DNA of 63,688 nucleotides, the filler included, from Octopus bimaculoides (taxonomy: Eukaryota), in the NCBI RefSeq assembly GCF_001194135.2. It is 8 parts of 6 records of this genome, joined end to end, with 100 filler letters (N's around TTAATTAATTAA, not from the genome) between each part and the next. Parts side by side here need not be neighbours in the genome. Positions count along the whole stretch, not along the records: positions 29,495 to 49,294 come from NC_068987.1; 7 more parts are not named here. One strand, written 5' to 3'. Under the pieces are notes generated by a model. It worked only from the letters and a program-made list of their open reading frames with translations. It did no database searches and was not told the origin of the DNA. A program made the position numbers and the translations under genes. This document shows, in pieces, positions 29,495-49,646 of the stretch (position 1 is its first letter; the number at the start of each line of letters is the position of its first letter).

Positions 29495-29627
29495 TTCAAG
29501 ATATCGTCATTCAGCTCTGGCATTCCGGCAGACACGCTTTCTTGTACAATCTTTTGTAAATACCCTTTGTCTTTCGCTTCAACTGCTTCCTTCAGCTTAC
29601 CTCGTAGGCTATCAGCCGATTTATATC
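29495..29627 (-). CDS. Exon 14, module A2 (partial, runs into gap)
   Basis: tttttcactag|GA TAT...; GYKSADSLRGKLKEAVEAKDKGYLQKIVQESVSAGMPELNDDILK. Confidence 0.8.
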
Positions 29628-31585
29628 CTAGTGAAAAACATTAAACAATGTAAATTGGAAGACATTCTGTCAAACATACATCGATGAAATAGTCAAAGCA
29701 TTATCTTAGATCATTTTAGAAGGAGAGCCACTTATTAGTACGATTACGTTCGTTGCAAATGTAATACACATGTAATTCCATGAACGTTCAATTGAAATAC
29801 TGCCGCAATATTACATATCGTGTAGCCTTTTCGACTGAATCACGTTTACAGAACATTCATACGTTTTGCTTACATAAATTGTCATATGTTAGATATATAT
29901 ACTTTTCTATAGGCAACGATATTTCAAATATCTAACCTCCGCGTCCACCTCCTAAGCTTTCTAGTGCGTCTCTCGCTTTTGACAGATCCCAACTCAATTC
30001 AGGATATGCAACGCCTTCACAGTCTTCAATGATTTGCCTGAGAGCTACTTTGTCTTTCAGTTTTGTCGCTTTTTCTAGCTCATCTCGTAAACTTTCGACG
30101 GTTTTCAAGTCTGGCAAAGGAAGATTATGCACGTTATACTAACTTCGTGTATCAAACACACCAATCATCGGTAAACATAATTATTAATGAAAAGTTTCAA
30201 TAGCCTCATAAAAGAGGCGGTTTCAAATGATGTCTCCATATCATAATAGAAGAATGTATAATATTCTATTAGTTCAATAGGCGTTTGAAAGCAAAATAAA
30301 TGCTATGTACCTTTTGGAGGAGAAATTTTAACGTCTTTCAATAAGTCTCGAGCAACGCTTATGTCTACGTCTAGTTCTGGCATTCCAGCAGCAATGCATT
30401 CGTGAATTACTTTGTCCAATGTATCTTTATCTCCCTGCTTCATAGCAGACTTTAGTTTTCGGCGAAGTGATTCAGGCGTCTTCGTCCCTGACAGAGTATT
30501 TTAACAGCGCAATAAATAAACTTGGAAAAAATTTCTGTATATATCTTTACTGATGTCATGAACACAATACCAAAGTGGAAAAAATAGAAGCAAAAACATC
30601 CGTTTGCAAATATACCCACTTAGATTTTCATGCATAATCACATAGAAACACACAGAAACACACAAGGAACATACGGATAAACACACTCACACACAAACAC
30701 ACAAATACTCTTACACACACACGAACACGCATACAAACACCACGAGAAAACTGGAAGAATGTAACCAGCCCCCTCGTTTTGATGTGTAGTATATATTTGC
30801 ATGTAAGTCAATGTGCAATTTAGTTTAGAGAAAATCTGCACGTAAGTGAAATCAAATATAAGAGTAAGATTGTTTTCTCTGCTCGTATGTATTTGTGGTG
30901 TACATGGATCTGCTTCATTGTATAAAGATATGCCTAACATTTATCGGGGTTGGAATATCCGGAGGCGGGAGCTCCTTCAAGAATTGGTTTCTACGGGGAA
31001 AATAATGATCAAAGGAAGTTGTACCATACAGAGATCACAAATGACCAGAACGTCTAACGATAGGCAGTTCCCAAGAACACGTACTAGCCTCAGTTTTTAC
31101 CGAGGTTCTGGAAACCAAATGTGTATGTATACGAAAGCCCAACTAACCTTTGCCCAATTTCTTAATACCTTCCACTAGCCATCGTCTCTCTGCTGTTATT
31201 AAATGTGAAGAAACATCAAGCAGTATAAATTTAACAATATCCTGTCAAGCACATAGATCATTTGAAACAAGTAACATTTACTAACATAATAAAATCGCAA
31301 CTGAAATATATATGTGGAATAGCTCAAGTTTTAAACATGCATATATGCATACAAGAATCCATCTTCAAAATACAATTCTCGGTGGTAACAATAAATTTTC
31401 GGAAATGTATAGAGAAATTCTTATGATCACTTTTGTAGAAGGTCTTTCATGTTTACAGGATATCTGAATTCGTGTCTAACAGCAGCCTTCGTCGCTTTCT
31501 ATCCAAAGGGTTTTTTAAACACAATATTTATACTATTATTTATAGCTTATATATCTTCTTCAAGATCCAATGTTCCTAAAACAGA

Positions 31586-31618
<33 letters not shown>

Positions 31619-31620
31619 CT

Positions 31621-31660
<40 letters not shown>

Positions 31661-31687
31661 NNNNNNNNNNTGTGTGTGTGTGTGTGT

Positions 31688-31733
<46 letters not shown>

Positions 31734-33426
31734 AGATATACAGACAGACGGACGGACGAGTTGATGGATGGTTGGATGGATGGATGGATGGTTCATTTTA
31801 GTATATGCAATTGCTGAAAATGATTCTACCTCCACGGCCGCCGCCAAGTCTCTCTAATATATCCCGAGCTTTCCGAAGGTCATTACCCAATTCTGCATAT
31901 TCCGCTTTCTCACATTCATGTATGACCTCCTGTATTTTTTTCACATCTTTTCGTTTTCCAGCCATTTCAAGTTGGTCCCGTAAATTATCAGGGGTTCTGA
32001 TGTCTATAAGAATATATATTCAAAAGAAATGTACAGATGCTGAAAATCCGAAACATACTAACATAATTTTAGTCCATTTTAAAATTTACAACAGCTAGGA
32101 ATGACCGTTATTCCTACTACAAACTCTATCAGAGTATCACCTGTTCACCTCTCGCCATGTTTTCAAGAACCGTTTGTTCACTTTTTGTCAAGACTAAGTT
32201 GTTTATTGAAAAGGAACTTTGCTGTCACAGTCATTCTATTTGGAAATAAATACCATCTTACTAGACAATTTCCACAGCATGACCAAAAATAGAATAAGAT
32301 TATATAGCTGCATTGTTTTTCCCGCGAACATTTCCCTTCGTGTTACTACACGAGAAAGAATAAATAACACGACTACCAACGTCATTGTACAAATCTCACC
32401 AAGGAGCAGTTTATTGAAGACAACTTCGAAATTATCAAGAAAAAATTATGAGCTAACTATGGAGCTACAGTATGGTTGGTTGACTGGCTTGAATTAGCAT
32501 TTCAAGCTTTTCAAACCACATTCTGGTGTCTTGAAAAGTGAAGGACACATCGGATAATATAGTCGGCCGAAATACTACTGATCAATCAGAACTTACTCGA
32601 AGTTAATGTACAAGGAACACAGTTTGATGTTTTACATCAGGAGTAAAACACGAATAAATAGCAGGGCAAAAATACAAGGAAGCGATTTGACTCAGTGTAT
32701 ACTACATTGCTTTTTCGCTTTCAAAAATGAAACATTGTTGCTTCCGAAACGTTGATATATACTCTTTTCTATCAGAACTTTATGGCATTCGTACTGTTGC
32801 ACATTGTTTATATTGCATTTATTTATTATCACATTGAAAGAGAACAAAAGCATATTTACTGATATCAAAATTTGAAAGGAAGATATTATTAACCACCATT
32901 ATTAAGCCTGCAAACGGAAGTTCACGTCTTCTTAATAACTACACGAGAAATCACTAAAGCAGTATTATTCAAATTCTGTTTTCCCACTCCCTGTATATCA
33001 ATAAACCAACCCATCTCTCTCTTTCATTATCCCTTTCCTGCATTTGCTCTCTCTCCCTCTTTCTCACACACACTGTCATTGTTACATACTTTGTATGAAA
33101 TAAAATTGTTCTAACCTCCAGTACCACCAGCAAGAATATCCGAAATCCTTCGAGCTTGTTGTATGTCTGAGTCAAGTTCTGGCATACCAGCAGCGACACT
33201 TTGTCGGATAGCTTTAGCCAAAGCATTTTTATCCTTGCTTTCCATAGCACTTCGTAAATTTTCTCGCAGAGAATCAACGGATTTTGTTCCTAATAATGTT
33301 AAATGTTTTTTTTTTACACTTACAACAATAAAGATATATTACTGGACACAATGTCAGTTATTTTTACGGAAAGTTATAACCAATTGAGCTTTTGCCAAAT
33401 AAGTGCTGTTTTGCTGCATGATTAAA

Positions 33427-33479
<53 letters not shown>

Positions 33480-33569
33480 NNNNNNNNNNNNNNNNNNNNN
33501 TGTGTACGTGCGTGCGTGCGTGTGTGTGTGTGCGTGCGTGCGTGTGTGTGTTTGTGTGTTTGTGTTTGC

Positions 33570-33608
<39 letters not shown>

Positions 33609-36600
33609 AGTGACTGATTATAACAATATAATATACCAATATAACGTTGAGTTTTATCATAAATAGCAAAATTAAATGTTGTTAAATGTTTTTCATATCC
33701 AATTAAACTTTGTAAGCTTTCCAGTATATCAAACATTAAATTAGCTAACCTCCAAGACCTCCTCCGAGGCTTTTGAGCGTGTTTCTAGCTTTACGGAGAT
33801 CTGAGCCAAGTTCTGGAAACTCTGCTGCTTCCAATTCTACGATTAGCTTTTCCAATGCATATCTATCCTTCTGCTTTGTGGCCCTTTTCAATCTTCTCCG
33901 AAATGAGTCTGGTGATTTTGATTCTAATGACTTATTTTCTTCAAGTGATTTTAGAACTTCTCTTGCTCTATGAATTCTAGCATCCAGTTCTGGCCTTCCA
34001 ACGCTAATACATTCATTTATAGCATCTTCCAGTCTTTCTTTGTCATTGTCTCTAATTGCTAGATCAATTTTCTCTCGTAAACCATCAACTGAAATAACTC
34101 CTATCGGATAGGAGATGCAACAAAAGTTAAACATTGTCACTTGATTTTCAATTTAATGAAATTTATTCACATTTTTATGGAGGAAATTTCTTTCATTATT
34201 TATATTAAAATTTTCGGGGTAAATGTATAGATTTTAGATGAGTTCTTAACGTTGCTTTCGATTTGATATTGTTTAAACGAAGTAACTGAAGCAGTTCATG
34301 CCATTGAAATATGTTTTGAATGTAATTGTACCAAGAAAAAAATACAGAAAAAGAAACTTATGAAATTAACTTCATCCTTAAAAACAGAACATTGTACAGT
34401 AAAGGACGACATTGATCTTTGGGAGTTTTGTAGTCAACTGAAAAAATGAAAGGTGAAGCAGCACTCTCTCCAAATATTTACTATTCATGCGATACGACTT
34501 TGCATCAATGAGACAGAAATAGACAACAACTATAATTGTTCAGAATGTTCATCAAAAACGTTTGCAAACCTCCATCCCCGCCACCTAAATCTTCTAGGTT
34601 AATACGAGCTCTCCGCAATTCTGAATTCAATTCTGGGTAACCAAGTATTTCACATTCAGCAATGATTTTACTCAGTTCTGGAACATCTTTTTGTTTAATA
34701 GCTTTTGCTAACTGATTGAGTAAAGCAGCTGGACTTTTAACTTCTGCAAGTACAATACATATATTGCGAGCCAAAATATCGAAAAATCCCACAAATAATT
34801 AATTTTAGATTAGTAAATACAATTGTTTCCGATTAAAGTATATATTTCAGTAAACCGACACATTTTTGTATGCAATTATTATTTGTGATAGTTATATTTA
34901 CAATTGCCAGGGTAGAAGACTAATTCTTTGCGAAAATTGAAGTTTGATATCCTTCGTAGATTCAAGATGGAAAGTCTCTGTCTAAAAGGTCAGTCAGTAA
35001 ATATTTAGTGATATAGATAGGAGGGCTGGAGTATCATTGATTCTTTGACGGCAATATATAATATATAACGAATTTTTAACTAGGGATATAAAGAAATATG
35101 TGTCTTATAGTGTTATTCTTTTGATTCTTTCATGCGAAAAAACAAAACGAAAACAAATGTATAAAACATAATGTAAATACAACAAAATTATTAGGAACAA
35201 TTTTCGGGTGAAAATCTAACCTCCACTGCCACCTCCAAGAATATCTGATACACTTCGAGCTTGTTGTATATCGGCTTCTAACTCTGTCATACCGGCAGCT
35301 ACACAATTTCTGATAGTTTTATCCAAATGTCTTTTATCATTTGATTTCATAACAGCTTTCAGATTTTCACGCAACGCGAATGGCGATATACTTCCTATAG
35401 ATCAAATTAAACAATAATGTAAACTAAGTCATTAGAGTACGGATATATTTATAATTCTCTTATCACTGATATTCGAAAGAGATTTAGAAACGATAATACT
35501 ATAATGATAGCAACATTACACTATTGTTTATTCTTAAAACCTAAATTACGAAAATAATACCATATGATGAGGTTTCTAACTTTCAAAATTTTCAAACTAT
35601 ACATGTATTATATTCCAAAACAATATATGAAAGCTTGAAAAAATTAGATTTGTTTTAGTTTTAGAAATACTTTAGAAATAACTTATATATGTAACTCATA
35701 AGAAGAGGGACTTTCTTTGCTAACCTCCTCGACCATACCCTAAACTTTCTAAAGCATCACGAGCGGCACTAAGATCTCTACCCAGTTCTGGATAGAGTGA
35801 TTTCTCACACTCAGATATTAGTTTTTCCAAGGAATACTTGTCTCTTTCTGCAATGGCTTGTGCTATCTCGTCTCGTAGTATCTCAGACGGTTTTGGTTCT
35901 AGAAAAAGAAAATACAAACAAATACAATCTGCAAGTGAAAATAGCGGTTTCCTTCCTCACTATTTTTGGCTGCGTATACGTGTATATATGTGTGTGTGTG
36001 CATAACTACATGTGCGTTTGATGACGCATGCACTGAAAATACACTAGATCTACAGCCAACATTGTTTACGAAGCGTCCTTATGTATATGTGCACTCCTTT
36101 AAAAACCCTGTGTTGGTGCACTCAGTTTCATATATGAACTTGTGTGACAACTCAAAAAATTTAATCATTCAGTATAACTTGCAGTGGAACACAGCAACTT
36201 TTACACTTTAAATGAAAGAACGGCAGCCATACTGAGTTTGCTGCCAGGAAAATTGATAAACGTGGATGTTTTATTAGAGCGCGGAATACTACAATATTTG
36301 CATTGAGAAGTCCCCCCACCCCATATAGACATACGGTGCTAAGAGCACATACATATATCATAGCAGACAAGAACCGTCTGGTATAGTCACCAGAACTACC
36401 AGATCACATGATTTCAGCATACTGCCTTTCTCGGTGGCTTACCTCCTCCCCTAAACCAGTCAAATTTCCCCGCCATCAATATATAGAATAACAGTGACTT
36501 TTCTGTCATTGGTATTGCAAAGAACCAGTAAGCTAATAAAAAAGTATTAGCGATGGAAGCAGTATCAATACTAAAAAGCAGATATATGTTTATGCTATTA

Positions 36601-37590
36601 GGACCGTACATTTATATGAGAGAACCTCTCAAGACGAACGTCACAGCATTCGATGCTCTAATAAAAGATTCGAATTTAGTAGGATATAAAGGCCGCTTTT
36701 CGGTATTAATACAACTTTCATCGTTAATATTTAGTTTTATATAAGAGGGTTGTCTATTGCAACATCAGTGACTTTATAGTTGGCTGCGAGCTTTGGCTGA
36801 TATAAAGGTCACCGAACCACTGGAGAAGCGTAGCACGTTAAAATCACATGATCTGGTAGTTCCGACGCACACACCAGACCGTTCTTGTCTGCTAAAATAT
36901 AGGTCAGTGTTCTTAGTACCATACGTCTATATGAAAGGTCTTCTCAGGGCGAATGCAGTTGTATTCGGCACTCTAATACAGCATCCACGTTTAGTCTAAT
37001 ATAAAGAATACCTTTCGGCATTAATATTGTTTCCGTCATTAATATTTACAAATTGATAAATGTATGCATCTAGGTCCGGTAGAGACATGTATCTGTCATG
37101 TCTTTACGTATATTGCCATATATGTCTGTGACTCATCCGAATTGTTGCCAGAGGTACTGTATCTGTGAATATCCATGTATTTCTATGACTGCATGTCAAA
37201 TATATACGAATGCACCTATGTAAATATATACATAACATATATAATATGAGTGTGCCTAAGTAAATTTCTATGTACACGCCTAAGGAGGTCCAAGATATAT
37301 GTTTATGCGTATGTATAGATACATATATTCTAAAATTTGGACAGACGTAACACAGGAACAAACCTGAAAATTCACACACACAAGACAGGACTTTATAAAT
37401 TACTCGTCATGATATATATATATGTATGTATTTATGAGTTGCGGGAAACTGCTCTTGCAATCCATAAATTAGGAAACTCTAGAGTAGCAAGAGACTACAT
37501 ATGTGTGTGTGTATGTATGTATGTATGTATGTATGTATGTATGTATGTATGCATGTGTGTATGTATGCATGCATGTACGCATGCATGTAC

Positions 37591-37628
<38 letters not shown>

Positions 37629-40103
37629 GGTTCATTGATCATGAAATACAAGCAATTTTTAGGATACGATGTGTTCGATTATATTTCCTACGATCCATAT
37701 GCTAGGAGCAAATGTGTTATCGTTCCATGTTTCTTTCAGTCGTTCCACTACGATATTTTAACAAACTACAAGTGCAGAACAAGTGTAGATAAAGTTTTAG
37801 TCTTATTCAATATACCTTACACGTTATTAGCAATAATTACTGTTACATAAGAAGATACCTTTTAAAGAGATTACATAACCAAATGAACAGAGATTGCATA
37901 ACAATCTTAAAGCTTCAAGTTATATAACAGAAGTGAGATGGTGCTTCGGTAACAACAAATATAACAGTAGTGTAAATATGGGTCGAAGAATTTATTTTGA
38001 TATTAATCTGGTGAAGGTAGAGATTTTTTCACATCATAGTAAAGAGAATTAGTCATTTTTTTCTTTCTCATTAACTCTGTGTTATTAAGTAGAAACAAAG
38101 CTACATATCAGATATCAGGTCACTATAAACCATTGCTACATTTTATTACTCCTATTTGACGTCTTGATTATAATTACCAATCTTCACACATACATCATTC
38201 AATTCAACTATACAATCCTATACAGGTACCATATATGTCAACGAACATAAATATAACTCCTAACATTAACATATACACATTCATTTATGTGATATCTAGT
38301 TAGATGATCCCTATGGAATTACTGGTATCGCATATTTATTCTTTAGTTACAGGTGTTTCAATAATATATAAGTTAAATAAATCAAATCGGAAAATATAAA
38401 TATAGGAAAAGATTATGAATCATTGAATATATAATATTGATTGTATTATTCATTAGGGACGAAAGACTAAATTAACATGTGTAAAACTTAGATGAATTCA
38501 TTTATATATAGAGACAGAAGATTAGATGAGAGGAGGATTCATTTCTTACAGGGAGAGTTTCCTCTAGAAATGCTAATAACAGAAATGGTAATGATGACGA
38601 CTTTTGAGTTTCAGTTGGCAAGATCATGTTAGAAGTTAAATTTGTCAATAAGTTTGTATAACAGACAGTTGTCTGGTCGAGAATGTAAAACAATACTAAG
38701 ATTGTGTATCATAGTACAGGTGGTTAGGACAGCGGACTCGCGGTCGGAGGATCGCGGTTTCGATTCCCAGGCCGGGCATTGTATATGTTTATTGAGCGAA
38801 AATACCTACAAAGCTCCACGAGGCTCCAGCAGGTGTACTCTTTGGCCCCAACTTTCTCTTATTCTTTCTTCCTGCTTCTTGAGTAATGCTGGGGGGTACA
38901 CATACGCCATAGAAACCGGGAAACCAGGTCCACGAGCCTGGCTAGGCTTTAAAAGGGGCGCATAATAAAATCATTGTACAGAGTCTCATAAATTAACTGG
39001 GATGGGCATCTCTAGAGTAGCGTCAAAGAAAACCAAAATGATTAGAGAAAGAACAAAGTTGAAAAGGAGGTGGAAAGAAGAGAGTGAGACAGGAATAAAT
39101 TGAAAGTGTAAGAACAATAGCTAGTCTCGTATGAGGGAATGAGTGTATATAAATAGACTTAAAAGGATGAGAGGCTTTTGTAATTTGCAGTAATAGTGGT
39201 GGTATATGAAGATGTAAAATAGTCTTATAATACTTTATAATTAAATTCATAATTAAAAATAATGGTAAAAGATTAATGGTAAAAAAAAAAACTAATATTA
39301 ACCAGAACAGTAAAAGTGTACATAAATATACATACGTACATCTATACATATATCTGTACAAAAATATAAATATAGAAACACATATATTCCTAGATATAGT
39401 CAGGCATACATCCACAAACACACCAATATATACACGCACATACTTATAGGTATATATATAAGCACAAACATCTGCTCTGACTCCTAGCCATATACCTAAA
39501 TGCGCATGTAAATGAATTTGTAAAGTCATGCAGACGTGTGTATATACATGTATCTCGTAATCAATTAAATATTTCATGAATACAGCATTATGAAATAGTT
39601 GTTAGAAGCACAATAAAAAGAAGTGTAAAACAAAGGATATTTAGAATCGAGAAAATAAGTTGATGCATAAAGTTGAGGTGATAGGACAGTACGACAACCA
39701 CTTGGAGATGTGGTAGAGATGAGTAACGAAATTCATGCAGCATAATTCATATGTGTATATGCATATGCTTGCATTTATTTATTCCAATACTGTTTATGAG
39801 TAAGGTAAACAGAATTTTAAGAATGTTTTATTAATCCGATATCTGCATCTAGTTGTTAGCTCATTATGCTTATCAATGAGATCCGCTGAAAATTTCAGAT
39901 GAATTCAGCAGTATGTTGGAGTTCTTAGATCTAAGAACTCCACCACACTGCTGATCACGAATAAATCGTATTTTATCTCCTGTCTTTCTCATATTCATTT
40001 AATACAGTAGTACCTCGGTTTACGAACGCCTCTGATTACAAATAAATCGTACTTTATATATATATATATATCTAGCTATCTAACTATATATATATAAACA
40101 CAT

Positions 40104-40149
<46 letters not shown>

Positions 40150-42350
40150 NNNNNNNNNNNNNNNNNNNNNNNNNNNNNNNNNNNNNNNNNNNNNNNNNNN
40201 NNNNNNNNNNNNNNNNNNNNNNNNNNNNNNNNNNNNNNNNNNNNNNNNNNNNNNNNNNNNNNNNNNNNNNNNNNNNNNNNNNNNNNNNNNNNNNNNNNNN
40301 NNNNNNNNNNNNNNNNNNNNNNNNNNNNNNNNNNNNNNNNNNNNNNNNNNNNNNNNNNNNNNNNNNNNNNNNNNNNNATATATATATATATACGGTAAAA
40401 AAAGAAAATGGAGGGGATACAAAAATGATATACATCAGCCGGTAGACATTCTATTGTCTATTTATTCTAAAACATAAGGAAGTATTATAAGAATGTATAC
40501 ACATGCAAAGACTGTGTGCTACACAAATATGTAGTAGTAATACATAAAAGAATAAAATATTAAAAGATTAAGAGATCAGTTCCTTACGGCCGTTTCTGCC
40601 AAGAGGCCACGATATCCTCCATGCTACCTCCATCTCTTCAGTGTTGGGATGGGTAGATAGAGTTTGGCTGTTGAGAGTGCCTCTTGGCTTCTTCAGAGGG
40701 TCTAAATAGCCTAAATAGTTAGGATAGCCGAAACATACAAGAGTCAGTTACCAATAGGTACAGTATATTTTTTCTTATTGAAGAGGGCATAAGAAGAATA
40801 CGACCAAAAGTTAGTGTAAGAGGAATAAAATTTCGCAAAATGGATTAGGTATAGGAAAGGGAAACAAGTCATAGACTTCAAGTGTTGCCTTCCAAGATTC
40901 ATGTTATTTTGTCCAGTGGTGGATAGGTGGATACAGTTTTTCTAAGGAGGAATTTTTAAGGAAGGGTAAATTTGGGCAGTGGTTCTTATTTTGCTTACTT
41001 ATAAATACACGTTATGTTTACAGTGATGGGTTTGAAACTATGGTCCGTGTTTCGGTGGTGGAAGTTTATATGTAGGATGCCAGCTGGTACTAAAGAGAGT
41101 ATGGCACCAGGTGGTGTTCATGCTCGCTATTTTTCGATCAACAAGTCCCTGAATCCTTGTGTGCAGTGGGATAGGGGTTATGGTCAGTCCTGCAACCTAA
41201 TTGGTCAGCTATTGTTTTGAAAACTATGACGCGATTCCGGTTCGTTGAGGGCTAACAGATAACACAAAAACAGATCAGATAAATAAATAAGTAAATAACT
41301 AAATGAGTAAGTAAATAAACAAATGAGTAAGTAAATAAATAAATGACTAAGTAAATAAATAAATAAGTAAATAAATAAATAAAAGCCGTGGCCACTATGC
41401 ACAAGTAGAAGAGCAAAATGACATTCAAACTAGATTAAATTAAAGTAAAGTAAAACAAGTAAAAAAAATAAATCAGTATGTGAGTGAGTGCAATAATTAA
41501 AGCAATACGATTAAGGGGATATGATCTTAAGGGACAGCATAAGAAAATAACTTATATATAAAGCACGATTTATTCGATATCAGAGTTGTGCGAAAACCGA
41601 GGTACTACTGTATATTCATACATGTCTACATTTATGCTCGTCTTCCACAAAACCTTATACATTTTCTTCTCTTTTTTACTTCTTCTCCTCCCTTTGTTCC
41701 TATTCTCTGCCATTCAGATTTGTTTTCCATTATTCATTTACTTGATTTTCCTCTCTCCGCTTCTTCATTATTATCTCTGCGTTTTACCTTCCCCTTACAT
41801 ACCTACGCTTTACCTCTCTATGTCCTTTTTCCTCTTCCTCTTTGCTTAATGGGCTGGCTCTCTAGAACCATTCCGACAGTTGCTATATATAGGAGACCTT
41901 TCATTTACTGTTTTTATTTGAAAATGCTTGACTGAAAGTAGTTTTGTAAGGGCTATGTTACATAACTACAAGAAACATGTGTGTTAAATGTGTATTGAAT
42001 GCGCTTGTGAGTGAGTGTATCAACGAGACAAGATGATAGTTGAATAGAAGTGCGTGAATGTTTGTATATATGCGCATGTAAACGAAAGGCATGGATGGGT
42101 AGGGAGAGGAGTAGTCCAAGGAAGGTATGTGTTTGTGTGAAAGCTTTGTTAGTGTATTGAGGGTTTGCCTGTAAGTGTAGAGATATTGAAAGATTAGATA
42201 AGAGGAGTGGGGATGGAATGGAGGACTAAAATGGGAGGTGCAGGTGGATGTGGGGTAAGTAGATGGGAGGAGAAGCAGAAGAAAGATGTTTGTGGTGAAA
42301 TGCAAGTTATTAAAATTGCATTAGTGAATTTATACGAAAAGACGTGTACA

Positions 42351-42408
<58 letters not shown>

Positions 42409-44435
42409 CTCCTGTGCTTTCTGAAAACGAGTGGAGGGGTTTGCAGCTCTTTACATATTTGTAAATACAAAACTTGTTGCAATACATAACTTATTGATTC
42501 AATGAAAGTTACTGAGATATGTTTCAAAGTTTTTATATATTTGAGTAAGTCTACCATAATACATTGCTTGCAAATAATGAAAATAAAAATAGAGTTATAT
42601 TAAATGGTAATAAATATGCTGTCAAATGAATATAAACAGAAATGAAATATAAATGAAAATGCCTAGAAACATAGATATATTTAGATGGTCTTGGAAACTA
42701 TATATAAGCAACTAGAGCCTTTTTTGCCGTCACTTGTGTGGAGATGAGAAGTGGGTATTAAATAATTATGTCTAAAATATATTGCAGTAAATTGGATTGT
42801 TATTCTAACAATAACTGGACAGAAAAAATTTCGATGTCATTTAATCATTTTGCATTGCACAACTTACCTGAAATTTATTTTATTTATTTATTTATTTATT
42901 ATAATCATATATTCTGTTTATAATATTCTAACAGAATATGATTTTCATTTCAGCACATGAAAGTAAAAACCAACATCAGTTGAGACCTAAAGGAAAAGGA
43001 ATTTATAATTCAAATATGTCTTCTTTATTTCACCATGTCTTCAAATGCTATATTTCTTTGAATTAGAGAGGTCATATATCAATTCTCGAAATTCAATTGA
43101 AGTTGCATGCCATGCATATAGAATGAGATCGTCATAAGAGTAATTTGAAAATCTAACCTGTACTGTTTTGTCTCATATCTTCAAGAACATTTCTTGCACG
43201 TTCTATGTCAGAATCTAGTTCTGGCAGTCCAGCAGTGACACATTCATTAATTACTCTGTCTAATTTGCCTTTGTCACCTTCCCTCATTGCGTTTCTGAGA
43301 TTGGTTCGCAGAGAGTCAGGTGTTTTATTTCCTAACAATGAAATACATATGACAGTGAGAATTTCATGAAATTGTGCGTGTTTATGAAACCATGCCATGC
43401 AGAAAATCGAGAAATACGTATCCCGTAATTGATTCTTTTGTGATAATCTAATTCATGCACATTTATATTTCAACTTTAAAAGAAATATTCACTAGATCAT
43501 TCAATAAAACAGTGCATGCACTAAGTGAATGAAAGATGAACTTCTATTTAGATATGAATCACACATCTAAAATGTACAATCCCGTAAAATGGAAAAATCG
43601 CTATATTCGAAGAAACATTGAACTAAATTTAACTCGAAACGCCATAAACACATAGGAAAGGAAAAAAAAACAGAAGATAAGTGAGAATAATTTCTTACGC
43701 GAAAATAAATGTATGAAAGAATGAAACTAGGAAATGTTAGAAACTGCTAATGTTAGTTATAAATTGACATAAGAAACAACTATTTCACACCGGCAATATT
43801 TAGCAATTTTTTATGACAACATAATATAGAAAACCTTGCTGCTGACCTCCACGACCACCACCAAGAGACTCTAGAGTATCCCTAGCTTTACAAAGATCAG
43901 CTGCTAGTTCTGGATAACCAGCTTCTTCACTGTCTGCAATGGCTTTCTGCAGTTCACCAATATCTTTCTGACGAATAGCACGAGCCAACTGACTCTGCAA
44001 TGTATCTGAAGGTACTACATCTAGTAAAATCGAAGAAAGAAGTAATTAAATATTGATTTATAACATCGGCACCACGCATTTTGGGGGAGGATAAAATTGA
44101 TTGAATAAATTGCAGTATTCCACTATTATTGCATTTTTAATGATCCTAGAAGGGTGAAACTATCACAGTGGGATTTAAACTCAGAACGTAAATGTTTGTA
44201 ACTCTATACCTTAATGTATTTCATCCAACTCCCTAACGGTGAAATATGAATAAAATCTATATATACTTATTATTGCAAATAAATGTTTATTTCTAAATAT
44301 CTAAAAAGATAAAACGTCTGTGATGTAAATATTAACGTTAAAATTTATCTGGAATACAAAGACTAAAAAGCTATAGCAATCAAGAATATCATGAAATTTT
44401 AAATCCTTATATTCTACAAAGTATACTGTGAGAAT

Positions 44436-44469
<34 letters not shown>

Positions 44470-47400
44470 TTTCTCTCTCTCTCTCTCTCTCCTTTTCTCT
44501 CTCTATCTTCTCTTTACAAGCTTAAATGTCTATAGAGGGACAGCGAAAGTCTTTCGCATTACATCGTGTGTTAATTTATCTTGCATCAAGCTGCCTAATG
44601 AAATTATATATAATGAAACCCGTGATTTATATAGTAACAGGTTTGAAACTATGAGCATAAGATATCGTAACATTTTACATTTGCAAGTGCAACATCGTAA
44701 CGTTCATCTTTATCTGAGAATACTTTCTTGATCATAAAAAACCCAAAAGTAAGTAACACATCTCATAAATGTAAATTTTAGGTTTGAGAGCTTATGTCAA
44801 AGAAGTAGATAGTTAGCAGATACCAACAATTTCATTAAGATTGGTATGTTGTATATTCTCAGATAGCAATTAATAATGTTTGATGTGATAATATAATACC
44901 TTTAAACATGTAAAATTTGCCAACGATCCACTTAAAGAATCTAAAATGCACTGCCTTTAATGTACTTCAGCATTCAAGTAAAATATATATTTTGAACAAC
45001 CTCTCAAGAAATACGCAATATCTTAGGTCAATAATCACGATCAAATATCAGCTGATTAGTCTATTGTGTAACTGTACAGTAGAATAAAGGCTAACCTCCA
45101 GAGCCACCACCAAGAATATCTGATACACGTCTTGCTTGTTGTATATCAACATCCAGTCCTGGCATGCCGGCTGCTACACTTTCTTGGATAACTCTATCCA
45201 ATTCACTTTTATCTTTAGTTTTCATTGCATCTTCAAGTTTGTCTCTTAACATATCTGCAGATATTGTTCCTGAGTGTAGATAATAATTCAAGTAAGAATA
45301 AGTGATAAAATATACTGGAAATATAAGAATTGCCTACTCTTAGTACAAAGAGTATTAATATATAACATTTCTTCAAAACTTCAAATAAATTATTTTTGCA
45401 TAACATATTTCATATAGAGCATGCGGACATATTAACGTATTCGTTTAATATATATATGTATGGTTTTGAAATAATACTGTATAAAGAGACTGTAATTTTG
45501 GCAAAGACAGTATTAAATAAGAAAAATCTGCATAAGGCGTTTTGCAATCATACAACTTATTCTATGGTAACTGCAACTACTTATACAGTAAAATTGATAT
45601 TTTTTTAAATAGGCTAAAGCCATGTTCATATTTCTCGGGCATTTTAAATTCATTTTGTGGGACTAAACCTCGAAGACTGTCGTATCAGGATATGTAATAT
45701 AATCGCCCTTGACTCTCATTAATGCGATTAAATATTGGTATCCCATTAAGACACAAACACTCTAATGTTTGTAACTAAAGGAAAATAAGTTATTGTGTCT
45801 CACCATACTTTACATCTTGTTCTACAGAATACACAATGAATTGTGTAATGGGAACACTAAATTTTGTATTGCAGGATACAGTCTGTGACACGAAAGCATA
45901 TTAATTTCTTGTAATAAGTTTTGAAATGCTTCAATGAAACAGGTATTTACCAAAAATTTATATTTGAACAATTCTATGTTACTTTGCCAATCTTTTAGCC
46001 AACTGACAATCGACAAGTTTTAAAACATATTGCATGAGAACGATGTAAGTTAGAAAATTGGGAAAAAGATGAAATTACTATATATAAATATATATATATA
46101 TATAAATAATGTTCAAATTTTATACGACCGCTAAAAAAAATAGACAGACAGACATATATACATACAGACAAACAGACAAACAGATAGATAGATGTAACCC
46201 ACAAGTTTAAAGACTGCGTCGCAGCAATATAAATTATACTATATATATTTCGAATCACACAAAATGCTAACCTCCACATTCTCCACTCAGGCTCTTCAGA
46301 GTATCTCTGGCTTGCCGTAAATCAGAACTCAGTTCTGGATATTTGGCTTCTTCACATTCGCGGATTAGTTTCTCAAGCAGTGGCCTGTTTCTTTCTTTGG
46401 TTGCTTTCTTTAGTTCATTACGTAAGGAAACGGGCGATCTCGAACCTGACAAGAGATAGTTGCTAAGATTAAATAAATGCTCGTCTTTGTCCTGTTGTTT
46501 TTCTTGTTTTAGATATTAGATTGTTTTTGTTTTTGGTTATTTCCCATGAATATGAGCGTTATTATGATAGGACTTCAAATGTAGTTGTTTCATTTTACTA
46601 CGATAGAACTAGAATATTGCGTTAAATGTTTAATTATAACGATTACAAAATTGTTTACTTAATTTTTTCTTTCGTTTTTTATCTTCTGCTTATATTTAAA
46701 TAGAAAAATTGAGGATGAGATGCATGCGTACGTGCTCGCACATGCATGTGTATGTGTGCGCGCGTATGTGTATAACCTTTTATCTTTTGCTTGTTTCAGT
46801 CATTATACTGCGGCCATCCAGGGACACCGCCTTGAAAAACTTTAGTCGGACGACACGAGCATTTTGTTTAAGGTTGGAACTTAATCTATCGGACTCTTTT
46901 GCCGAGCTGCTAATTTACAGGGAAGTAAACACACTAACACCTATTGTCAAGCTGTGTGAGTCAAGACAAACGCAGACGTATCGATTTATTTTTCTACAAG
47001 CATCTGTAAATGTAATTGCCCTACTGAATGCTACCGCGAAAATATGTACGCATATCATAGTAATTTGATGTGTAGGTGTTTCATTTCTTGTCCATTGCTT
47101 TACTATTACACTAAGTTTAGCGCTCTACAATACAGTTACATTACCTGCTACCAATATCAACAAATATGATTAATAATGGTCAAATTTCCAACAACCACCT
47201 ACTGACATATTTTGACCATTTATTTCTTTATTTCTGCTATTCTTATATCTGTTTCTAGAAACGAACTGAATTTTTGTAGCTCATCTTTCGTAAAGATAAT
47301 TCTTTCAAATTAAGTAATAATCCGCTCACATGAGAATTATGTAGAATGAATAATGCAAATATCACTAATATCATTTTGTGTTGGATTTTCAATGTATTGT

Positions 47401-47612
47401 GCTCTGGTTACGTATTATAGCTTATATCATAGCGCATTTTACATGCGGTTTTAAGAGTTTAACACGGTAAACTATATTGAACTCTAATATAACTGGCTAC
47501 CTATTATAATGATATATGTGTATACATACTTGTATGTGTATGTGTAAATTATATGTATTATTTATATAGTACGTAATATATACATATATATTACTAGACC
47601 AAATATTATAAA

Positions 47613-47646
<34 letters not shown>

Positions 47647-48279
47647 TAGACCAAATATTATAAAAGGGTATTATTTTGAACTGAGAAAAAGATACGGCGA
47701 GCGATTGAGAGATGAGCAATATATACACACATACATGTGTGTGTAATATATACATACACACATATTTTTGTCTGTGTTTCCAGTGTTGTCCGAGCTTTAC
47801 AAGCTCATCTAAAAGCTCTGGATTACCAGCTTCGCTGTTTGCAATGACGTTTTGGAGTTGATCAACATTTTTCAACCGATTAACACGAGTCAATCGACTA
47901 TGTAATATTTTTAAATGTACTACATGCCAGATGCATAAAAGGAAGTGTGTGGATGTATATGTATAGGTATCTGCATGCACAGGAACATAAATAAATAAAA
48001 ACAGAAAGCTTCCTAATTATCAGGGCTGCTTTTATCAAGCAGAAGCTATATGGAAGGAAGATAAGATCCGTACGCTGCAGTATGTTAATTTGACTCACTG
48101 ACCTGGTTGGTGCTTCTCACGTAAGTCGTGGAGTAATTCTCTTGCTTTCTGCACATCTGTGTCTAGTTCTTGCAGTCCAGCTGCTACACATTCGTTTACT
48201 GCACTTTCTAACTGGGCTTTATCTCCATGTTGCATAACGTTTGATAGCATTTGTCGTAATGCTTCTGGTGATTTACTTC
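29495..48279 (-). CDS. Multi-exon gene segment encoding at least 15 tandem ~58-aa helical modules (about 860 aa visible); start and end not established
   Basis: All 14 exons have AG acceptors and the 13 complete ones have GT donors, all phase 1, so they splice into one open frame (2445 nt for the 13 complete exons). Shared pattern: LR..L..A....D...L...I.E(C/S)..AG.PEL..D(I/L)..AR..L. Confidence 0.88.
29937..30110 (-). CDS. Exon 13, module B1 (174 nt)
   Basis: ctttgccag| ... GGAG|gttaga; DLKTVESLRDELEKATKLKDKVALRQIIEDCEGVAYPELSWDLSKARDALESLGGGRG. Confidence 0.9.
30311..30487 (-). CDS. Exon 12, module A1 (177 nt)
   Basis: ctctgtcag| ... AAAG|gtacat; GTKTPESLRRKLKSAMKQGDKDTLDKVIHECIAAGMPELDVDISVARDLLKDVKISPPK; not in the ORF track. 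Confidence 0.88.
31830..32003 (-). CDS. Exon 11, module B2 (174 nt)
   Basis: ttcttatag| ... GGAG|gtagaa (weak donor); DIRTPDNLRDQLEMAGKRKDVKKIQEVIHECEKAEYAELGNDLRKARDILERLGGGRG. Confidence 0.82.
33116..33289 (-). CDS. Exon 10, module A2 (174 nt)
   Basis: cattattag| ... GGAG|gttaga; GTKSVDSLRENLRSAMESKDKNALAKAIRQSVAAGMPELDSDIQQARRISDILAGGTG. Confidence 0.88.
33750..34100 (-). CDS. Exon 9, fused modules A1+B1 (351 nt = 177+174)
   Basis: atccgatag| ... GGAG|gttagc; GVISVDGLREKIDLAI...LEENKSL/ESKSPDSFRRRL...LKSLGGGLG. Confidence 0.9.
34570..34743 (-). CDS. Exon 8, module B2 (174 nt)
   Basis: tacttgcag| ... GGAG|gtttgc; EVKSPAALLNQLAKAIKQKDVPELSKIIAECEILGYPELNSELRRARINLEDLGGGDG. Confidence 0.88.
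35221..35394 (-). CDS. Exon 7, module A2 (174 nt)
   Basis: gatctatag| ... GGAG|gttaga; GSISPFALRENLKAVMKSNDKRHLDKTIRNCVAAGMTELEADIQQARSVSDILGGGSG. Confidence 0.88.
35725..35898 (-). CDS. Exon 6, module B1 (174 nt)
   Basis: tttttctag| ... GGAG|gttagc; EPKPSEILRDEIAQAIAERDKYSLEKLISECEKSLYPELGRDLSAARDALESLGYGRG. Confidence 0.9.
36258..36992. repeat. Intronic inverted repeat (arms 36258-36443 and 36807-36992) with a third, more diverged tandem copy between them
   Basis: gaactaccagatca versus tgatctggtagttc, aaacgtggatg versus catccacgttt, and agcagacaagaac versus gttcttgtctgct are exact reverse complements. Confidence 0.8.
38714..38966 (+). mobile_element. tRNA-headed SINE
   Basis: gtggttaggacagcggactcgcgg...ggtttcgattccc...tttattgagcgaaaa; the head is shared with the 16.4-16.8 kb SINE. 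Confidence 0.75.
40005..41610. mobile_element. Tigger/pogo-like MITE with ~55-bp TIRs and TA target sites, inflated by internal insertions
   Basis: TA|cagtagtacctcggtttacgaac ... gtgcgaaaaccgaggtactactg|TA. Confidence 0.7.
43158..43331 (-). CDS. Exon 5, module A1 (174 nt)
   Basis: cattgttag| ... ACAG|gttaga; GNKTPDSLRTNLRNAMREGDKGKLDRVINECVTAGLPELDSDIERARNVLEDMRQNST. Confidence 0.9.
43847..44020 (-). CDS. Exon 4, module B2 (174 nt)
   Basis: ttttactag| ... GGAG|gtcagc; DVVPSDTLQSQLARAIRQKDIGELQKAIADSEEAGYPELAADLCKARDTLESLGGGRG. Confidence 0.9.
45096..45269 (-). CDS. Exon 3, module A2 (174 nt)
   Basis: tacactcag| ... GGAG|gttagc; GTISADMLRDKLEDAMKTKDKSELDRVIQESVAAGMPGLDVDIQQARRVSDILGGGSG. 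Confidence 0.9.
46272..46445 (-). CDS. Exon 2, module B1 (174 nt)
   Basis: tcttgtcag| ... GGAG|gttagc; GSRSPVSLRNELKKATKERNRPLLEKLIRECEEAKYPELSSDLRQARDTLKSLSGECG. Confidence 0.9.
47777..47925 (-). pseudogene. Decayed B2-type pseudo-exon
   Basis: Aligns to exon 4 at DNA level (ATGTAGTAC..., GAGCTT-GTAAAGCT versus GATCTTTGTAAAGCT). The acceptor position reads GC instead of AG, there is a 1-bp deletion, and the 3' end and donor are lost. Confidence 0.82.
48103..48279 (-). CDS. Exon 1 of the visible array, module A1 (177 nt)
   Basis: attgatcag| ... CCAG|gtcagt; GSKSPEALRQMLSNVMQHGDKAQLESAVNECVAAGLQELDTDVQKARELLHDLREKHQP; not in the ORF track. Confidence 0.88.
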
Positions 48280-48869
48280 CTGATCAATAAAGTGTGGAAA
48301 ATTCCCAAGACTTTAGATATAATTTTACCAAAATAATCTTTCTGTAAAGAAGCATGCAGATGAGATAACAGAAATGCATGCTGGTGACTCCATGCCTTTA
48401 TACACAAAGTTGACTCACTTTTAAAATTTCCATATAGCTAACTGAAGCATTGATCTCTTGACCATAAGCTTTAGAAATAACTACACTGTGTATATAGAAT
48501 TCAAGAGTAAACTTCATATGCGCAGAAATCAAAATGTAGGGTATGCATTTTTTTTTTAATGCTCGTTAAAACATTTTAATTAAAAAGTGTTGATTTAAAT
48601 ATTTAGTATTATAATTTTCTCTCCCCTCTCGCGAGCTCTCTATTTCTTTTCTCTCTCACCCTGTCACTCTCTCTCCACACACACACACACACACAGACAC
48701 ACACATATACACACACACACACACATACACACACACACACACACATACACACGCACATCATATATCAAAAGTTGACAGTGTACACTGAGTTTCAGCCCAT
48801 CCGACTAACCCTTGCCAACGTGGAGTACAGTCGTAAAGTGATGATAATGATCATGAATATAATATATAT

Positions 48870-49293
48870 ATATATATATATATATACAAATAATATGTAA
48901 GTATATGCATATATACCCACATGTATGTACACACTTACATCTACATGTATATATAGATGCATATCTGGGTACAGGGCGTCACAAAAAAAAACGTGGACAA
49001 AATGAGAACAGAGTACTGAAAACACACAGGCCACATAGAGAACATTTCCTTCATCAGCTGCCACCATTCTAAAACTAAGTGTTTCGAAGAGTAGGGCAGG
49101 ACGCATTGCTAGAATGGCTCTTCCCGCGGAAACAAATTAAATTTGTAATGCGGAAAAATATAGTGGCGAACAGAAAACACGACAGGAGAACGAAACAATG
49201 AAAATAAACAAGAAGGGCTAGTAGGGTCAGAAGTGAAAAAAATATATATGTATGCAGAACGCTGTGATGTGACGAACGGAAAAGATAAGAAGA
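48870..49293 (-). mobile_element. Dispersed ~430-bp element carrying a permuted hammerhead-like motif (copy C host)
   Basis: Colinear and similar to 60226-60660; its 3' tail GACGCCCTGTACCCAGATATGC is also similar to the 10.28-kb tail. Confidence 0.75.
49051..49123 (-). ncRNA. Permuted hammerhead-like motif, copy C
   Basis: GAAGAG-CCATTCTA-GCAAT-GCGTC-CTGCCC-TA-CTCTTC-GAAACAC-TTAGTTT-TAGAATGG-T-GGCAG-CTGATGA. Confidence 0.65.
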
Positions 49294-49646
49294 ANNNNNN
49301 NNNNNNNNNNNNNNNNNNNNNNNNNNNNNNNNNNNNNNTTAATTAATTAANNNNNNNNNNNNNNNNNNNNNNNNNNNNNNNNNNNNNNNNNNNNTTTTGT
49401 GAATGAAACAAACTAGATCCTAAATAAAAAATGAATGCTTAATATGACAAATTTTCAGATTTTTTACGTCATTTTAAAAAGGAGCTGATTCTGTGTCTCA
49501 AACTAACCAGATCCAAGTATAGTGCATACCATCCTCCACAATTTGCTACTCATATGAAGTACATATGTATTTTAACAATTTCTATCAAATACACTCTCTT
49601 TCTTGAGCATAAAAAATCCTCTTCCTTGATGACAATAACTTATATA

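What the first reader, a model, noticed from the sequence alone, without database searches (positions are those of the whole stretch)
29495..48279. One-exon-one-module array of symmetric phase-1 exons encoding a long helical repeat protein
Seen: 14 exons over 19 kb with near-invariant length (174/177 nt), all phase 1-1 and stop-free. They are highly diverged at the DNA level but keep the hydrophobic periodicity and the PEL..D..AR motif. Any subset of exons can be skipped in frame, so the locus could give a combinatorial set of isoforms. No domain name is recognisable from the sequence alone. Inference: each module is a two- or three-helix unit forming an extended rod or solenoid.
Basis: partly seen in the sequence, partly recalled or inferred. 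Interest (0 to 1): 0.85.

Follow-up and report, generated by a model that had tools for sequence, protein, structure and literature searches.

The report
Octopus KY-like gene's helical-module exon array
This is part of a very long octopus gene of the kyphoscoliosis-peptidase/hillarin family. Its tail is built from dozens of duplicated 174-base exons, each encoding a small three-helix bundle of a kind no domain database has named.

Summary
On the minus strand, 13 complete exons sit between 29937 and 48279. Twelve are 174 or 177 nt and one is 351 nt (two modules fused). A 14th exon is cut by the piece edge. All have AG/GT splice sites and phase 1-1, and all three assembly gaps are intronic.

The first five exons align without gaps, junction residues included, to an Octopus vulgaris protein of 2069 aa. 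That protein has an N-terminal transglutaminase-like/Ig-like_KY region followed by 16 such modules.

Nine modules were compared with other octopus-like assemblies (eight full exons plus the cut one):
- Six of the full exons were scored against their flanks: 93% identical, against about 85% for introns.
- dN/dS is 0.13-0.32 across all nine.
- There are no indels, and the splice sites checked are kept.

AlphaFold gives each 58-aa module as a three-helix bundle with a disordered, mostly Gly-rich linker: beads on a string, not a solenoid. No Pfam or PDB relative was found.

Modules alternate between two types, A and B. A distant cephalopod contig carries at least 44 modules downstream of KY-like coding sequence, mostly as 174-nt phase 1-1 exons.

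Combinatorial splicing is arithmetically possible but untested. The flanking introns show no extra conservation.

The exon architecture is textbook tandem exon duplication. The domain family itself appears undescribed.

The parts
48103..48279 (-). Exon m01 (177 nt, phase 1-1), B-type module without a Gly linker
   Evidence: 84% identical to O. vulgaris P0152 residues 1179-1233
47801..47908 (-). Decayed A-type pseudo-module in intron 1. It has no phase-1 acceptor and has lost the AR motif.
   Evidence: HMM E = 3e-4; translation. The O. vulgaris model joins m01 directly to m02.
46272..46445 (-). Exon m02 (174 nt), A-type module
   Evidence: 95% identical to P0152
45096..45269 (-). Exon m03 (174 nt), B-type module with a GGGSG linker
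   Evidence: 90% identical to P0152
43847..44020 (-). Exon m04 (174 nt), A-type module with a GGGRG linker
   Evidence: orthologue in L004 with AG/GT kept
43158..43331 (-). Exon m05 (174 nt), B-type module. It is the last module shared with the O. vulgaris model.
35899..43157 (-). Intron 5 (7259 nt). It contains the 228-N gap at 40150-40377 and no further module.
35725..35898 (-). Exon m06 (174 nt), A-type module
   Evidence: orthologue in L001
35221..35394 (-). Exon m07 (174 nt), B-type module with a GGGSG linker
34570..34743 (-). Exon m08 (174 nt), A-type module
33750..34100 (-). Exon m09+m10 (351 nt): a B module and an A module fused, with no intron between them
   Evidence: AlphaFold model of two bundles joined by a disordered linker
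33116..33289 (-). Exon m11 (174 nt), B-type module with a Gly linker
31830..32003 (-). Exon m12 (174 nt), A-type module
30311..30487 (-). Exon m13 (177 nt), B-type module without a Gly linker
   Evidence: orthologue in L003, dN/dS 0.27
29937..30110 (-). Exon m14 (174 nt), A-type module
   Evidence: orthologue in L005, dN/dS 0.13
29495..29627 (-). Exon m15, B-type module, cut off by the edge of the piece. The array continues beyond it.
   Evidence: L005 shows the full m15 and a further A-type module, m16.

Best explanation
The window holds an internal stretch of the C-terminal repeat region of an octopus gene of the KY / hillarin / ltd-1 family. Members of this family have an N-terminal transglutaminase-like core and Ig-like_KY domains, and are cytoplasmic proteins associated with the cytoskeleton.

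The tail is an array of 58-residue modules. Each module is one 174-nt phase 1-1 exon. Each folds on its own into a small three-helix bundle and is joined to the next by a short disordered linker, usually Gly-rich (GGGRGG or GGGSGG).

The array grew by tandem duplication of exon blocks. The basic unit is a B+A pair and possibly a four-exon block. Phase symmetry is the condition that lets such duplications stay in frame.

Shown here: exon structure, gene family by orthology, purifying selection, and the predicted fold.

Inferred: the exons are mostly constitutive, and the array serves as a long, flexible, multivalent tether or spacer (possibly extensible under force) between the KY-like head and the C-terminal tail.
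For: - Exon structure.
- Gene identity: concatenated m01-m05 aligns gaplessly, junction residues included, to O. vulgaris CAI9725887.1 (P0152, 2069 aa) residues 1179-1465 at about 90%. Haliotis 'ltd-1-like' proteins have the same head followed by 2-3 modules.
- Physical linkage in another cephalopod: an Ig-like_KY product is called immediately upstream of at least 44 same-strand modules on ENA contig ctg115097l. There, 35 of 44 exons are exactly 174 nt in phase 1-1.
- Selection: six full exons are 93.1% identical against introns at 85-87%. dN/dS is 0.32 (m04-m08), 0.27 (m13) and 0.19 (m14+m15). There are no indels, and AG/GT is kept where checked.
- Fold: three helices per module at pLDDT 81, a linker below pLDDT 50, and two-module pTM 0.41.
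- Duplication history: identity is 45-49% within a type and 35% across types. B modules with and without a Gly linker alternate perfectly. Only the exons share DNA similarity.
Against: - No transcript or spliced-read evidence for m06-m15 was obtainable.
- The O. vulgaris model does not contain orthologues of m06-m16, so those exons could be skipped, or absent, in that species.
- The KY-like head is not inside this window. The link rests on orthology and on synteny in another species.
- AlphaFold used only 7 sequences in the two-module run, so weak packing between modules cannot be excluded.
- The tether or spring function is inference only.
- The period-4 super-repeat is only weakly supported (permutation p = 0.05-0.09).
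Confidence: 0.75

Rival explanations
1. The array is a bank of regulated cassette exons. Different subsets are skipped in frame to give many length isoforms, as happens in the titin I-band.
For: - All exons are phase 1-1, so any skip is in frame.
- 11 of 13 donors have a pyrimidine at +3 (mostly G|GTTAG). From general knowledge that is a weak 5' splice site, and it is kept in orthologues.
- The O. vulgaris model joins the m05 orthologue to a module outside this window. It omits counterparts of at least 11 modules that exist in this and another species.
Against: - Introns flanking the exons are no more conserved than the intron bulk (86.6% against about 85%).
- dS (0.145) matches intron divergence, so there is no extra constraint on synonymous sites.
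- GTTAG donors and phase 1-1 exons are inherited by nearly all of the 44 or more paralogous exons in a distant cephalopod. They are therefore ancestral features of the duplicated unit, not locus-specific regulation.
- The O. vulgaris omission may simply be a gene-model error. NCBI models of this gene in O. bimaculoides are fragmented.
Confidence: 0.2
2. The distal exons (m06 onward) are relics or belong to a separate, possibly unexpressed, gene. Only m01-m05 belong to the KY-like transcript.
For: They are absent from the O. vulgaris protein model. A 7.3-kb intron containing an assembly gap separates m05 from m06.
Against: - m06-m08 and m13-m15 have intact frames, conserved AG/GT sites where checked, no indels and dN/dS of 0.13-0.32 between species.
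- The A/B alternation continues in register across intron 5.
- Phase-1 exons with no initiator exon cannot stand alone.
- A genuine relic looks different: the pseudo-module at 47801-47908 has lost both its motif and its splice sites.
Confidence: 0.04
3. The modules stack into a continuous rigid helical rod or solenoid, like spectrin, HEAT or TPR arrays.
For: The sequence is all-helical and regularly periodic. Related ~49-residue repeats in protist proteins lack Gly linkers and may be continuous.
Against: - Most modules end in GGG(R/S)GG linkers predicted to be disordered.
- The two-module model has pTM 0.41 and no confident interface.
- Fold search found no solenoid match with E below 0.5.
Confidence: 0.08

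Closest known systems
KY (kyphoscoliosis peptidase) / hillarin / C. elegans LTD-1 / yeast Cyk3 family of transglutaminase-like proteins
   Same: The orthologous O. vulgaris protein and the O. bimaculoides fragments carry Transglut_core and Ig-like_KY domains and are named 'kyphoscoliosis peptidase-like'. Haliotis 'ltd-1-like' proteins also carry 2-3 of these modules. Family members act at the cytoskeleton or in cytokinesis (PMC3718969).
   Different: Described members have none or only a few such modules. Here there are at least 16 in a row in this piece and its immediate continuation, and at least 44 in another cephalopod. The module has no Pfam model. The KY-like head itself lies outside the window.
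Giant modular proteins built by tandem duplication of symmetric-phase exons (titin Ig/PEVK exons, nebulin super-repeats); from general knowledge
   Same: One module per exon, uniform exon length, a single symmetric phase, higher-order super-repeats (A/B pairs), lineage-specific copy number, and in-frame skipping possible.
   Different: The fold is different (a 58-aa three-helix bundle rather than Ig or nebulin repeats). The linkers are Gly-rich. No splicing data exist, and association with muscle is not shown.
Tandem 58-residue three-helix-bundle arrays such as Staphylococcus protein A domains E-D-A-B-C; from general knowledge
   Same: Module size is about 58 residues, the architecture is a three-helix bundle, and the units are independently folded on short flexible linkers.
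   Different: There is no sequence or significant fold-search relationship. The setting is eukaryotic, intracellular and exon-encoded, and no ligand is known. This is an analogy only.
Spectrin repeats
   Same: Tandem three-helix units in cytoskeletal proteins.
   Different: Spectrin repeats are about 106 aa and joined by a continuous helix. There is no Pfam spectrin hit. The modules here are half that size and joined by Gly linkers.

Membership tests
KY / hillarin / LTD-1 (transglutaminase-like) protein family | Transglutaminase-like core domain (Pfam PF01841) in the same polypeptide | tested here: inconclusive
   The domain is not inside the window. It is present in the O. vulgaris/O. bimaculoides cluster (P0095/P0151/P0152) whose member P0152 aligns at about 90%, gaplessly, with m01-m05. 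The link is by orthology, not by contiguous sequence here.
KY / hillarin / LTD-1 (transglutaminase-like) protein family | KY-type Ig-like domains (Pfam PF23265) upstream of the repeat region, on the same strand | tested here: inconclusive
   Met in the orthologous protein cluster. Also met on ENA contig ctg115097l, where an Ig-like_KY product lies directly upstream of module 1. Not testable in this 19.8-kb piece.
Modular proteins expanded by tandem duplication of symmetric-phase exons | All repeat exons share one symmetric intron phase and a length divisible by 3 | tested here: met
   13 of 13 complete exons are phase 1-1 and 174, 177 or 351 nt long. 35 of 44 exons in a distant cephalopod are exactly 174 nt.
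Modular proteins expanded by tandem duplication of symmetric-phase exons | Exon boundaries coincide with structural module boundaries | tested here: met
   Boundaries fall in the disordered linker between predicted bundles. The one exception is the fused m09+m10 exon.
Modular proteins expanded by tandem duplication of symmetric-phase exons | Alternative in-frame use of the repeat exons | not testable with these tools
   No transcript data are available. The protein search found only genomic single-exon ORFs.
Spectrin repeat | A ~106-residue three-helix repeat recognised by the Pfam spectrin model | tested here: not met
   There is no spectrin hit in Pfam scans of the 814-aa concatenate or of single modules. 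The module is 58 aa.
Any Pfam-A family or solved structure | Significant sequence or fold match | tested here: not met
   All Pfam hits fall below their gathering scores. PDB by phmmer or profile returns only de novo designed helical bundles, at E of 2e-4 or weaker. All Foldseek matches have E above 0.5.

The most novel reading that the evidence does not exclude
The array could be the extensible or length-tunable element of a cephalopod giant cytoskeletal protein: a KY-like head, dozens of unfoldable three-helix beads on Gly linkers, and a tail. Blocks of phase 1-1 exons with weak GTTAG donors would then be differentially included to set protein length by tissue. The 16-module O. vulgaris form would be a genuine short isoform. 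This would be functionally parallel to titin but built from an undescribed domain.
Probability: 0.15. Interest if true: 0.65.

Novelty: new member of a known kind. Interest (0 to 1): 0.4.

Why it matters
The exon architecture is a clean example of protein growth by tandem duplication of symmetric-phase exons, but it is not a new principle.

Three things are new:
- The 58-aa module is a domain family with no Pfam model and no solved relative. The profile search gave 226 cluster representatives (clusters at 50% identity) at E of 0.001 or better, and 128 at 1e-10 or better. Most of the best 150 are short single-module ORFs.
- In cephalopods the module forms arrays of tens of copies behind a KY/hillarin-like head. 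These arrays turn over between distant lineages but are conserved one-to-one within Octopus.
- Current gene models for this locus appear fragmented or shortened.

Defining this domain would improve cephalopod annotation. It would also give a handle on a possibly giant cytoskeletal protein of unknown role.

Tried and rejected
A 115-aa m05+m06 query returned only two genomic single-exon ORFs and no joined transcript product.
- Looking up a window ORF (81 aa) by exact sequence found nothing, so the source species and sample could not be identified that way.
- Pfam scans of the concatenate, the single modules and the long homologues gave only sub-threshold noise in the repeat region.
- PDB sequence and fold searches gave no meaningful relative.
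- Rfam found nothing in the piece.
- Literature searches for KY or hillarin in molluscs and cephalopods found nothing about these repeats.
- I considered whether m16 equals the O. vulgaris module that follows m05 in its model. It does not, so the extent of the skipped or missing block is unknown.
- I looked for one-to-one orthology between Octopus modules and the 44-module ENA array. Only module 1 matches (81%); the others are 50-65% identical and not colinear.
- The period-4 super-repeat is suggestive but not significant by permutation.
Full report
**What is in the sequence**

The piece (29495-49294) is 66% A+T and has (CA)n microsatellites next to each of its three N gaps. It has no long ORF.

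Using the conserved frame and the nearest in-phase AG and GT, I defined 13 complete exons:
- 48103-48279 (177 nt)
- 46272-46445, 45096-45269, 43847-44020, 43158-43331, 35725-35898, 35221-35394, 34570-34743 (174 nt each)
- 33750-34100 (351 nt)
- 33116-33289, 31830-32003 (174 nt each)
- 30311-30487 (177 nt)
- 29937-30110 (174 nt)

Every exon begins with two bases that complete a codon and ends with one extra base. All are therefore phase 1-1, and the split codon is usually Gly.

The 351-nt exon holds two modules with no intron, so the 13 exons encode 14 modules.

An HMM built from the modules and run on the six-frame translation of the piece gave four results:
- It recovers exactly these 14 modules, at E = 1e-24 to 1e-29.
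- It finds a 15th module at 29495-29627, which has a phase-1 acceptor but is cut by the piece edge.
- It finds a decayed copy at 47801-47908 in intron 1 (E = 3e-4), which has lost the AR motif and has no in-phase acceptor.
- It finds nothing else on either strand.

All three assembly gaps are intronic: intron 11, intron 9 and the 7259-nt intron 5. The alternation of module types is in register across each gap. Continuity of the reading frame is therefore not at stake.

**Internal organisation**

The modules come in two alternating types:
- Type A: ...EC-E-x-A-x-Y-PEL-xx-DL-xx-ARD-x-LESLGGGRG
- Type B: ...EC-V-AAG-M-PEL-D-x-DI-xx-AR...

Identity is 45-49% within a type and 35% between types.

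B modules alternate perfectly between a form ending in GGGSG-like linkers (m03, m07, m11, and m15 as seen in the orthologous contig L005) and a form with a non-Gly linker (m01, m05, m09, m13). This suggests a four-exon super-repeat. Permutation support from sequence identity alone is weak (p = 0.05-0.09).

At the DNA level only the exons resemble each other (61-76%). The introns do not. The duplications are therefore old, and the exon similarity is maintained by selection.

**What gene it is**

Pfam gives nothing at its thresholds, and neither does the PDB by sequence.

A profile search of 1.84 billion cluster representatives found 226 proteins at E of 0.001 or better and 128 at 1e-10 or better. 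Most of the best 150 are single-module ORFs of 50-130 aa, which are exon-sized genomic ORFs. A few are long proteins.

Source names and sequences show the following:
- The best long relative is Octopus vulgaris CAI9725887.1 (P0152, 2069 aa, 'Transglutaminase-like domain-containing protein').
- It clusters with O. bimaculoides XP_052825369.1 ('kyphoscoliosis peptidase-like, partial').
- The cluster representative has Transglut_core and three Ig-like_KY domains.
- P0152 continues with 16 modules and a C-terminal tail.

Concatenated m01-m05 aligns to P0152 residues 1179-1465 without a single gap. Identity per module is 84-95%, and the residues encoded across my predicted junctions match. This independently confirms the splice sites and the phase.

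From m06 onward the match to P0152 drops to paralogue level. The O. vulgaris model goes from the m05 orthologue to modules that are not in this window.

Haliotis 'ltd-1-like' proteins have the same head followed by 2-3 modules. The module is therefore an old accessory of lophotrochozoan KY/hillarin-like proteins.

**Are the exons under selection?**

Short genomic contigs from other octopus-like samples cover several of the exons:

| Contig | Sample | Modules covered |
|---|---|---|
| L001/L002 | Logan SRR11869391 / SRR11869384 | m06-m08 |
| L004 | Logan SRR11869384 | m04-m05 |
| L005 | Logan SRR11869380 | m14, m15 and a further A-type module, m16 |
| L003 | ENA ERZ25513664 | m13 |

Results from these comparisons:
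- Six full exons are 93.1% identical, against 86.6% for the 60 nt of intron on each side and about 85% for whole introns.
- No exon has an indel or a stop.
- The seven exons checked for splice sites keep their AG and GT.
- Nei-Gojobori dN/dS is 0.32 for m04-m08 (dN 0.047, dS 0.145, 855 nt), 0.27 for m13 and 0.19 for m14+m15.

This also holds for the distal exons that the O. vulgaris model lacks.

**Structure**

AlphaFold2 on the naturally fused two-module exon, with a 7-row alignment, gave six helices in two groups. The linker is below pLDDT 50, mean pLDDT is 76 and pTM is 0.41.

A single module with a 112-sequence alignment gave helices at residues 4-17, 20-33 and 36-52, with pLDDT 80.8 and pTM 0.59.

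The nearly invariant residues sit at helix caps and in the core: D19 before helix 2, P-E-L at the start of helix 3, and A45-R46 in helix 3. This placement is my reading of the model.

Foldseek against the PDB gave no match with E below 0.5 for either model. A profile search of PDB sequences returned only de novo designed helical bundles.

The picture is small autonomous three-helix bundles on flexible, mostly Gly-rich linkers. It is not a rod or a solenoid.

**Wider context**

Four loci from one 151.6-kb ENA contig (ERZ21867824 ctg115097l) were fetched. They show:
- A product with Ig-like_KY directly upstream of module 1, which is 81% identical to module 1 of the O. vulgaris protein.
- At least 44 modules on the same strand over 60 kb.
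- 35 of the 44 lie in exons of exactly 174 nt with phase 1-1.
- Two B+A pairs are fused, as m09+m10 are here.
- Apart from module 1, the modules are only 50-65% identical to Octopus modules and are not colinear with them.

The arrays have therefore expanded or turned over separately in distant cephalopods. Within Octopus they are one-to-one.

In this window the array must be longer than any current model. It has 5 modules upstream (from P0152), then m01-m16, then at least 6 downstream. NCBI models of this gene in O. bimaculoides are fragments.

**Splicing question**

Phase 1-1 makes every skip in-frame. Eleven of the 13 donors have a pyrimidine at +3, and eight of them read G|GTTAG. This departs from the usual GTRAG, which I state from general knowledge. 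The departure is conserved in orthologues.

The same donor is found in 29 of 43 exons of the distant array. It is therefore an inherited property of the duplicated unit.

Flanking introns show no extra conservation, and dS equals intron divergence. That argues against tightly regulated cassette exons.

The omission of m06-m16 from the O. vulgaris model is the only hint of skipping. It may instead be an annotation artefact. No transcript-derived protein could be found.

I therefore rate constitutive inclusion as most likely. The combinatorial-isoform idea remains open, at about 0.2.

**Verdict**

The locus is a stretch of a very long KY/hillarin-like gene. Its tail is an exon-per-module array of an undescribed three-helix domain. 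The architecture is a known kind, namely tandem duplication of symmetric-phase exons. The domain, and its scale in cephalopods, appear to be new.

The function is inferred only: a flexible tether or spacer, possibly extensible.

Noticed in passing
window 47801-47908 (minus strand), in intron 1: A decayed A-type pseudo-module (…VDQLQNVIANSEAGNPELLDELVKLGQHW…). It has lost the AR motif and has no in-phase acceptor. It is a relic of a lost exon inside the array.
   Followed up: partly
donor sites of all exons, e.g. window 46267-46271, 45091-45095, 35720-35724, 33745-33749: 11 of 13 donors have a pyrimidine at +3, and eight read G|GTTAG, instead of the usual GTRAG. The same donor occurs in orthologues and in 29 of 43 exons of a distant cephalopod array. 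It is unexplained and may bear on how efficiently these exons are spliced.
   Followed up: partly
window 33750-34100; also P0002-P0006, and L009 5879-6226 and 9969-10316: B+A module pairs fused into one exon by intron loss recur in several species and positions. The only fusion in the other order seen was P0008 (A then B).
   Followed up: partly
window 31566-31765, 33427-33614, 40076-40149, 48643-48768: Long (CA)n/(TG)n microsatellites occupy several introns and border all three assembly gaps, which probably explains the gaps.
   Followed up: no
proteins P0136/P0157 (Breviolum minutum), P0106 (Rhodelphis marinus), P0007, P0132, P0133, P0141: Protist proteins contain many ~49-residue repeats (R..L..A....D...L..AI.EAE.AGL...L..AR..L) that match the octopus module profile at E = 1e-10 to 1e-22. 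Two of them (P0136, P0106) have myosin heads, and P0136 also ends in a weak, sub-threshold ADP-ribosyltransferase-like match. None of the repeat regions that were scanned has a Pfam hit. Whether this is homology or convergence is undecided.
   Followed up: partly
L006-L009 (ENA ERZ21867824 contig ctg115097l, record 37630-107663): A contig deposited under an ENA metagenome-assembly accession is evidently cephalopod host DNA. It carries the KY-like gene with at least 44 modules. About 37 kb further downstream was not examined, and 5 kb (82362-87321) was not fetched.
   Followed up: partly
A-type modules, e.g. window 43847-43870, 31830-31850, 29937-29957: Most A modules end in GGGRGG, a single RGG-type motif recurring every ~116 residues. 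Possible arginine methylation or RNA or protein binding was not examined.
   Followed up: no
P0152 residues ~185-205 (outside the window): By eye, the transglutaminase-like core of the octopus and Haliotis proteins has NTWNAV / SDWNAV where catalytic family members have H-x-W-N. This suggests a non-catalytic head. It was not tested by alignment.
   Followed up: no
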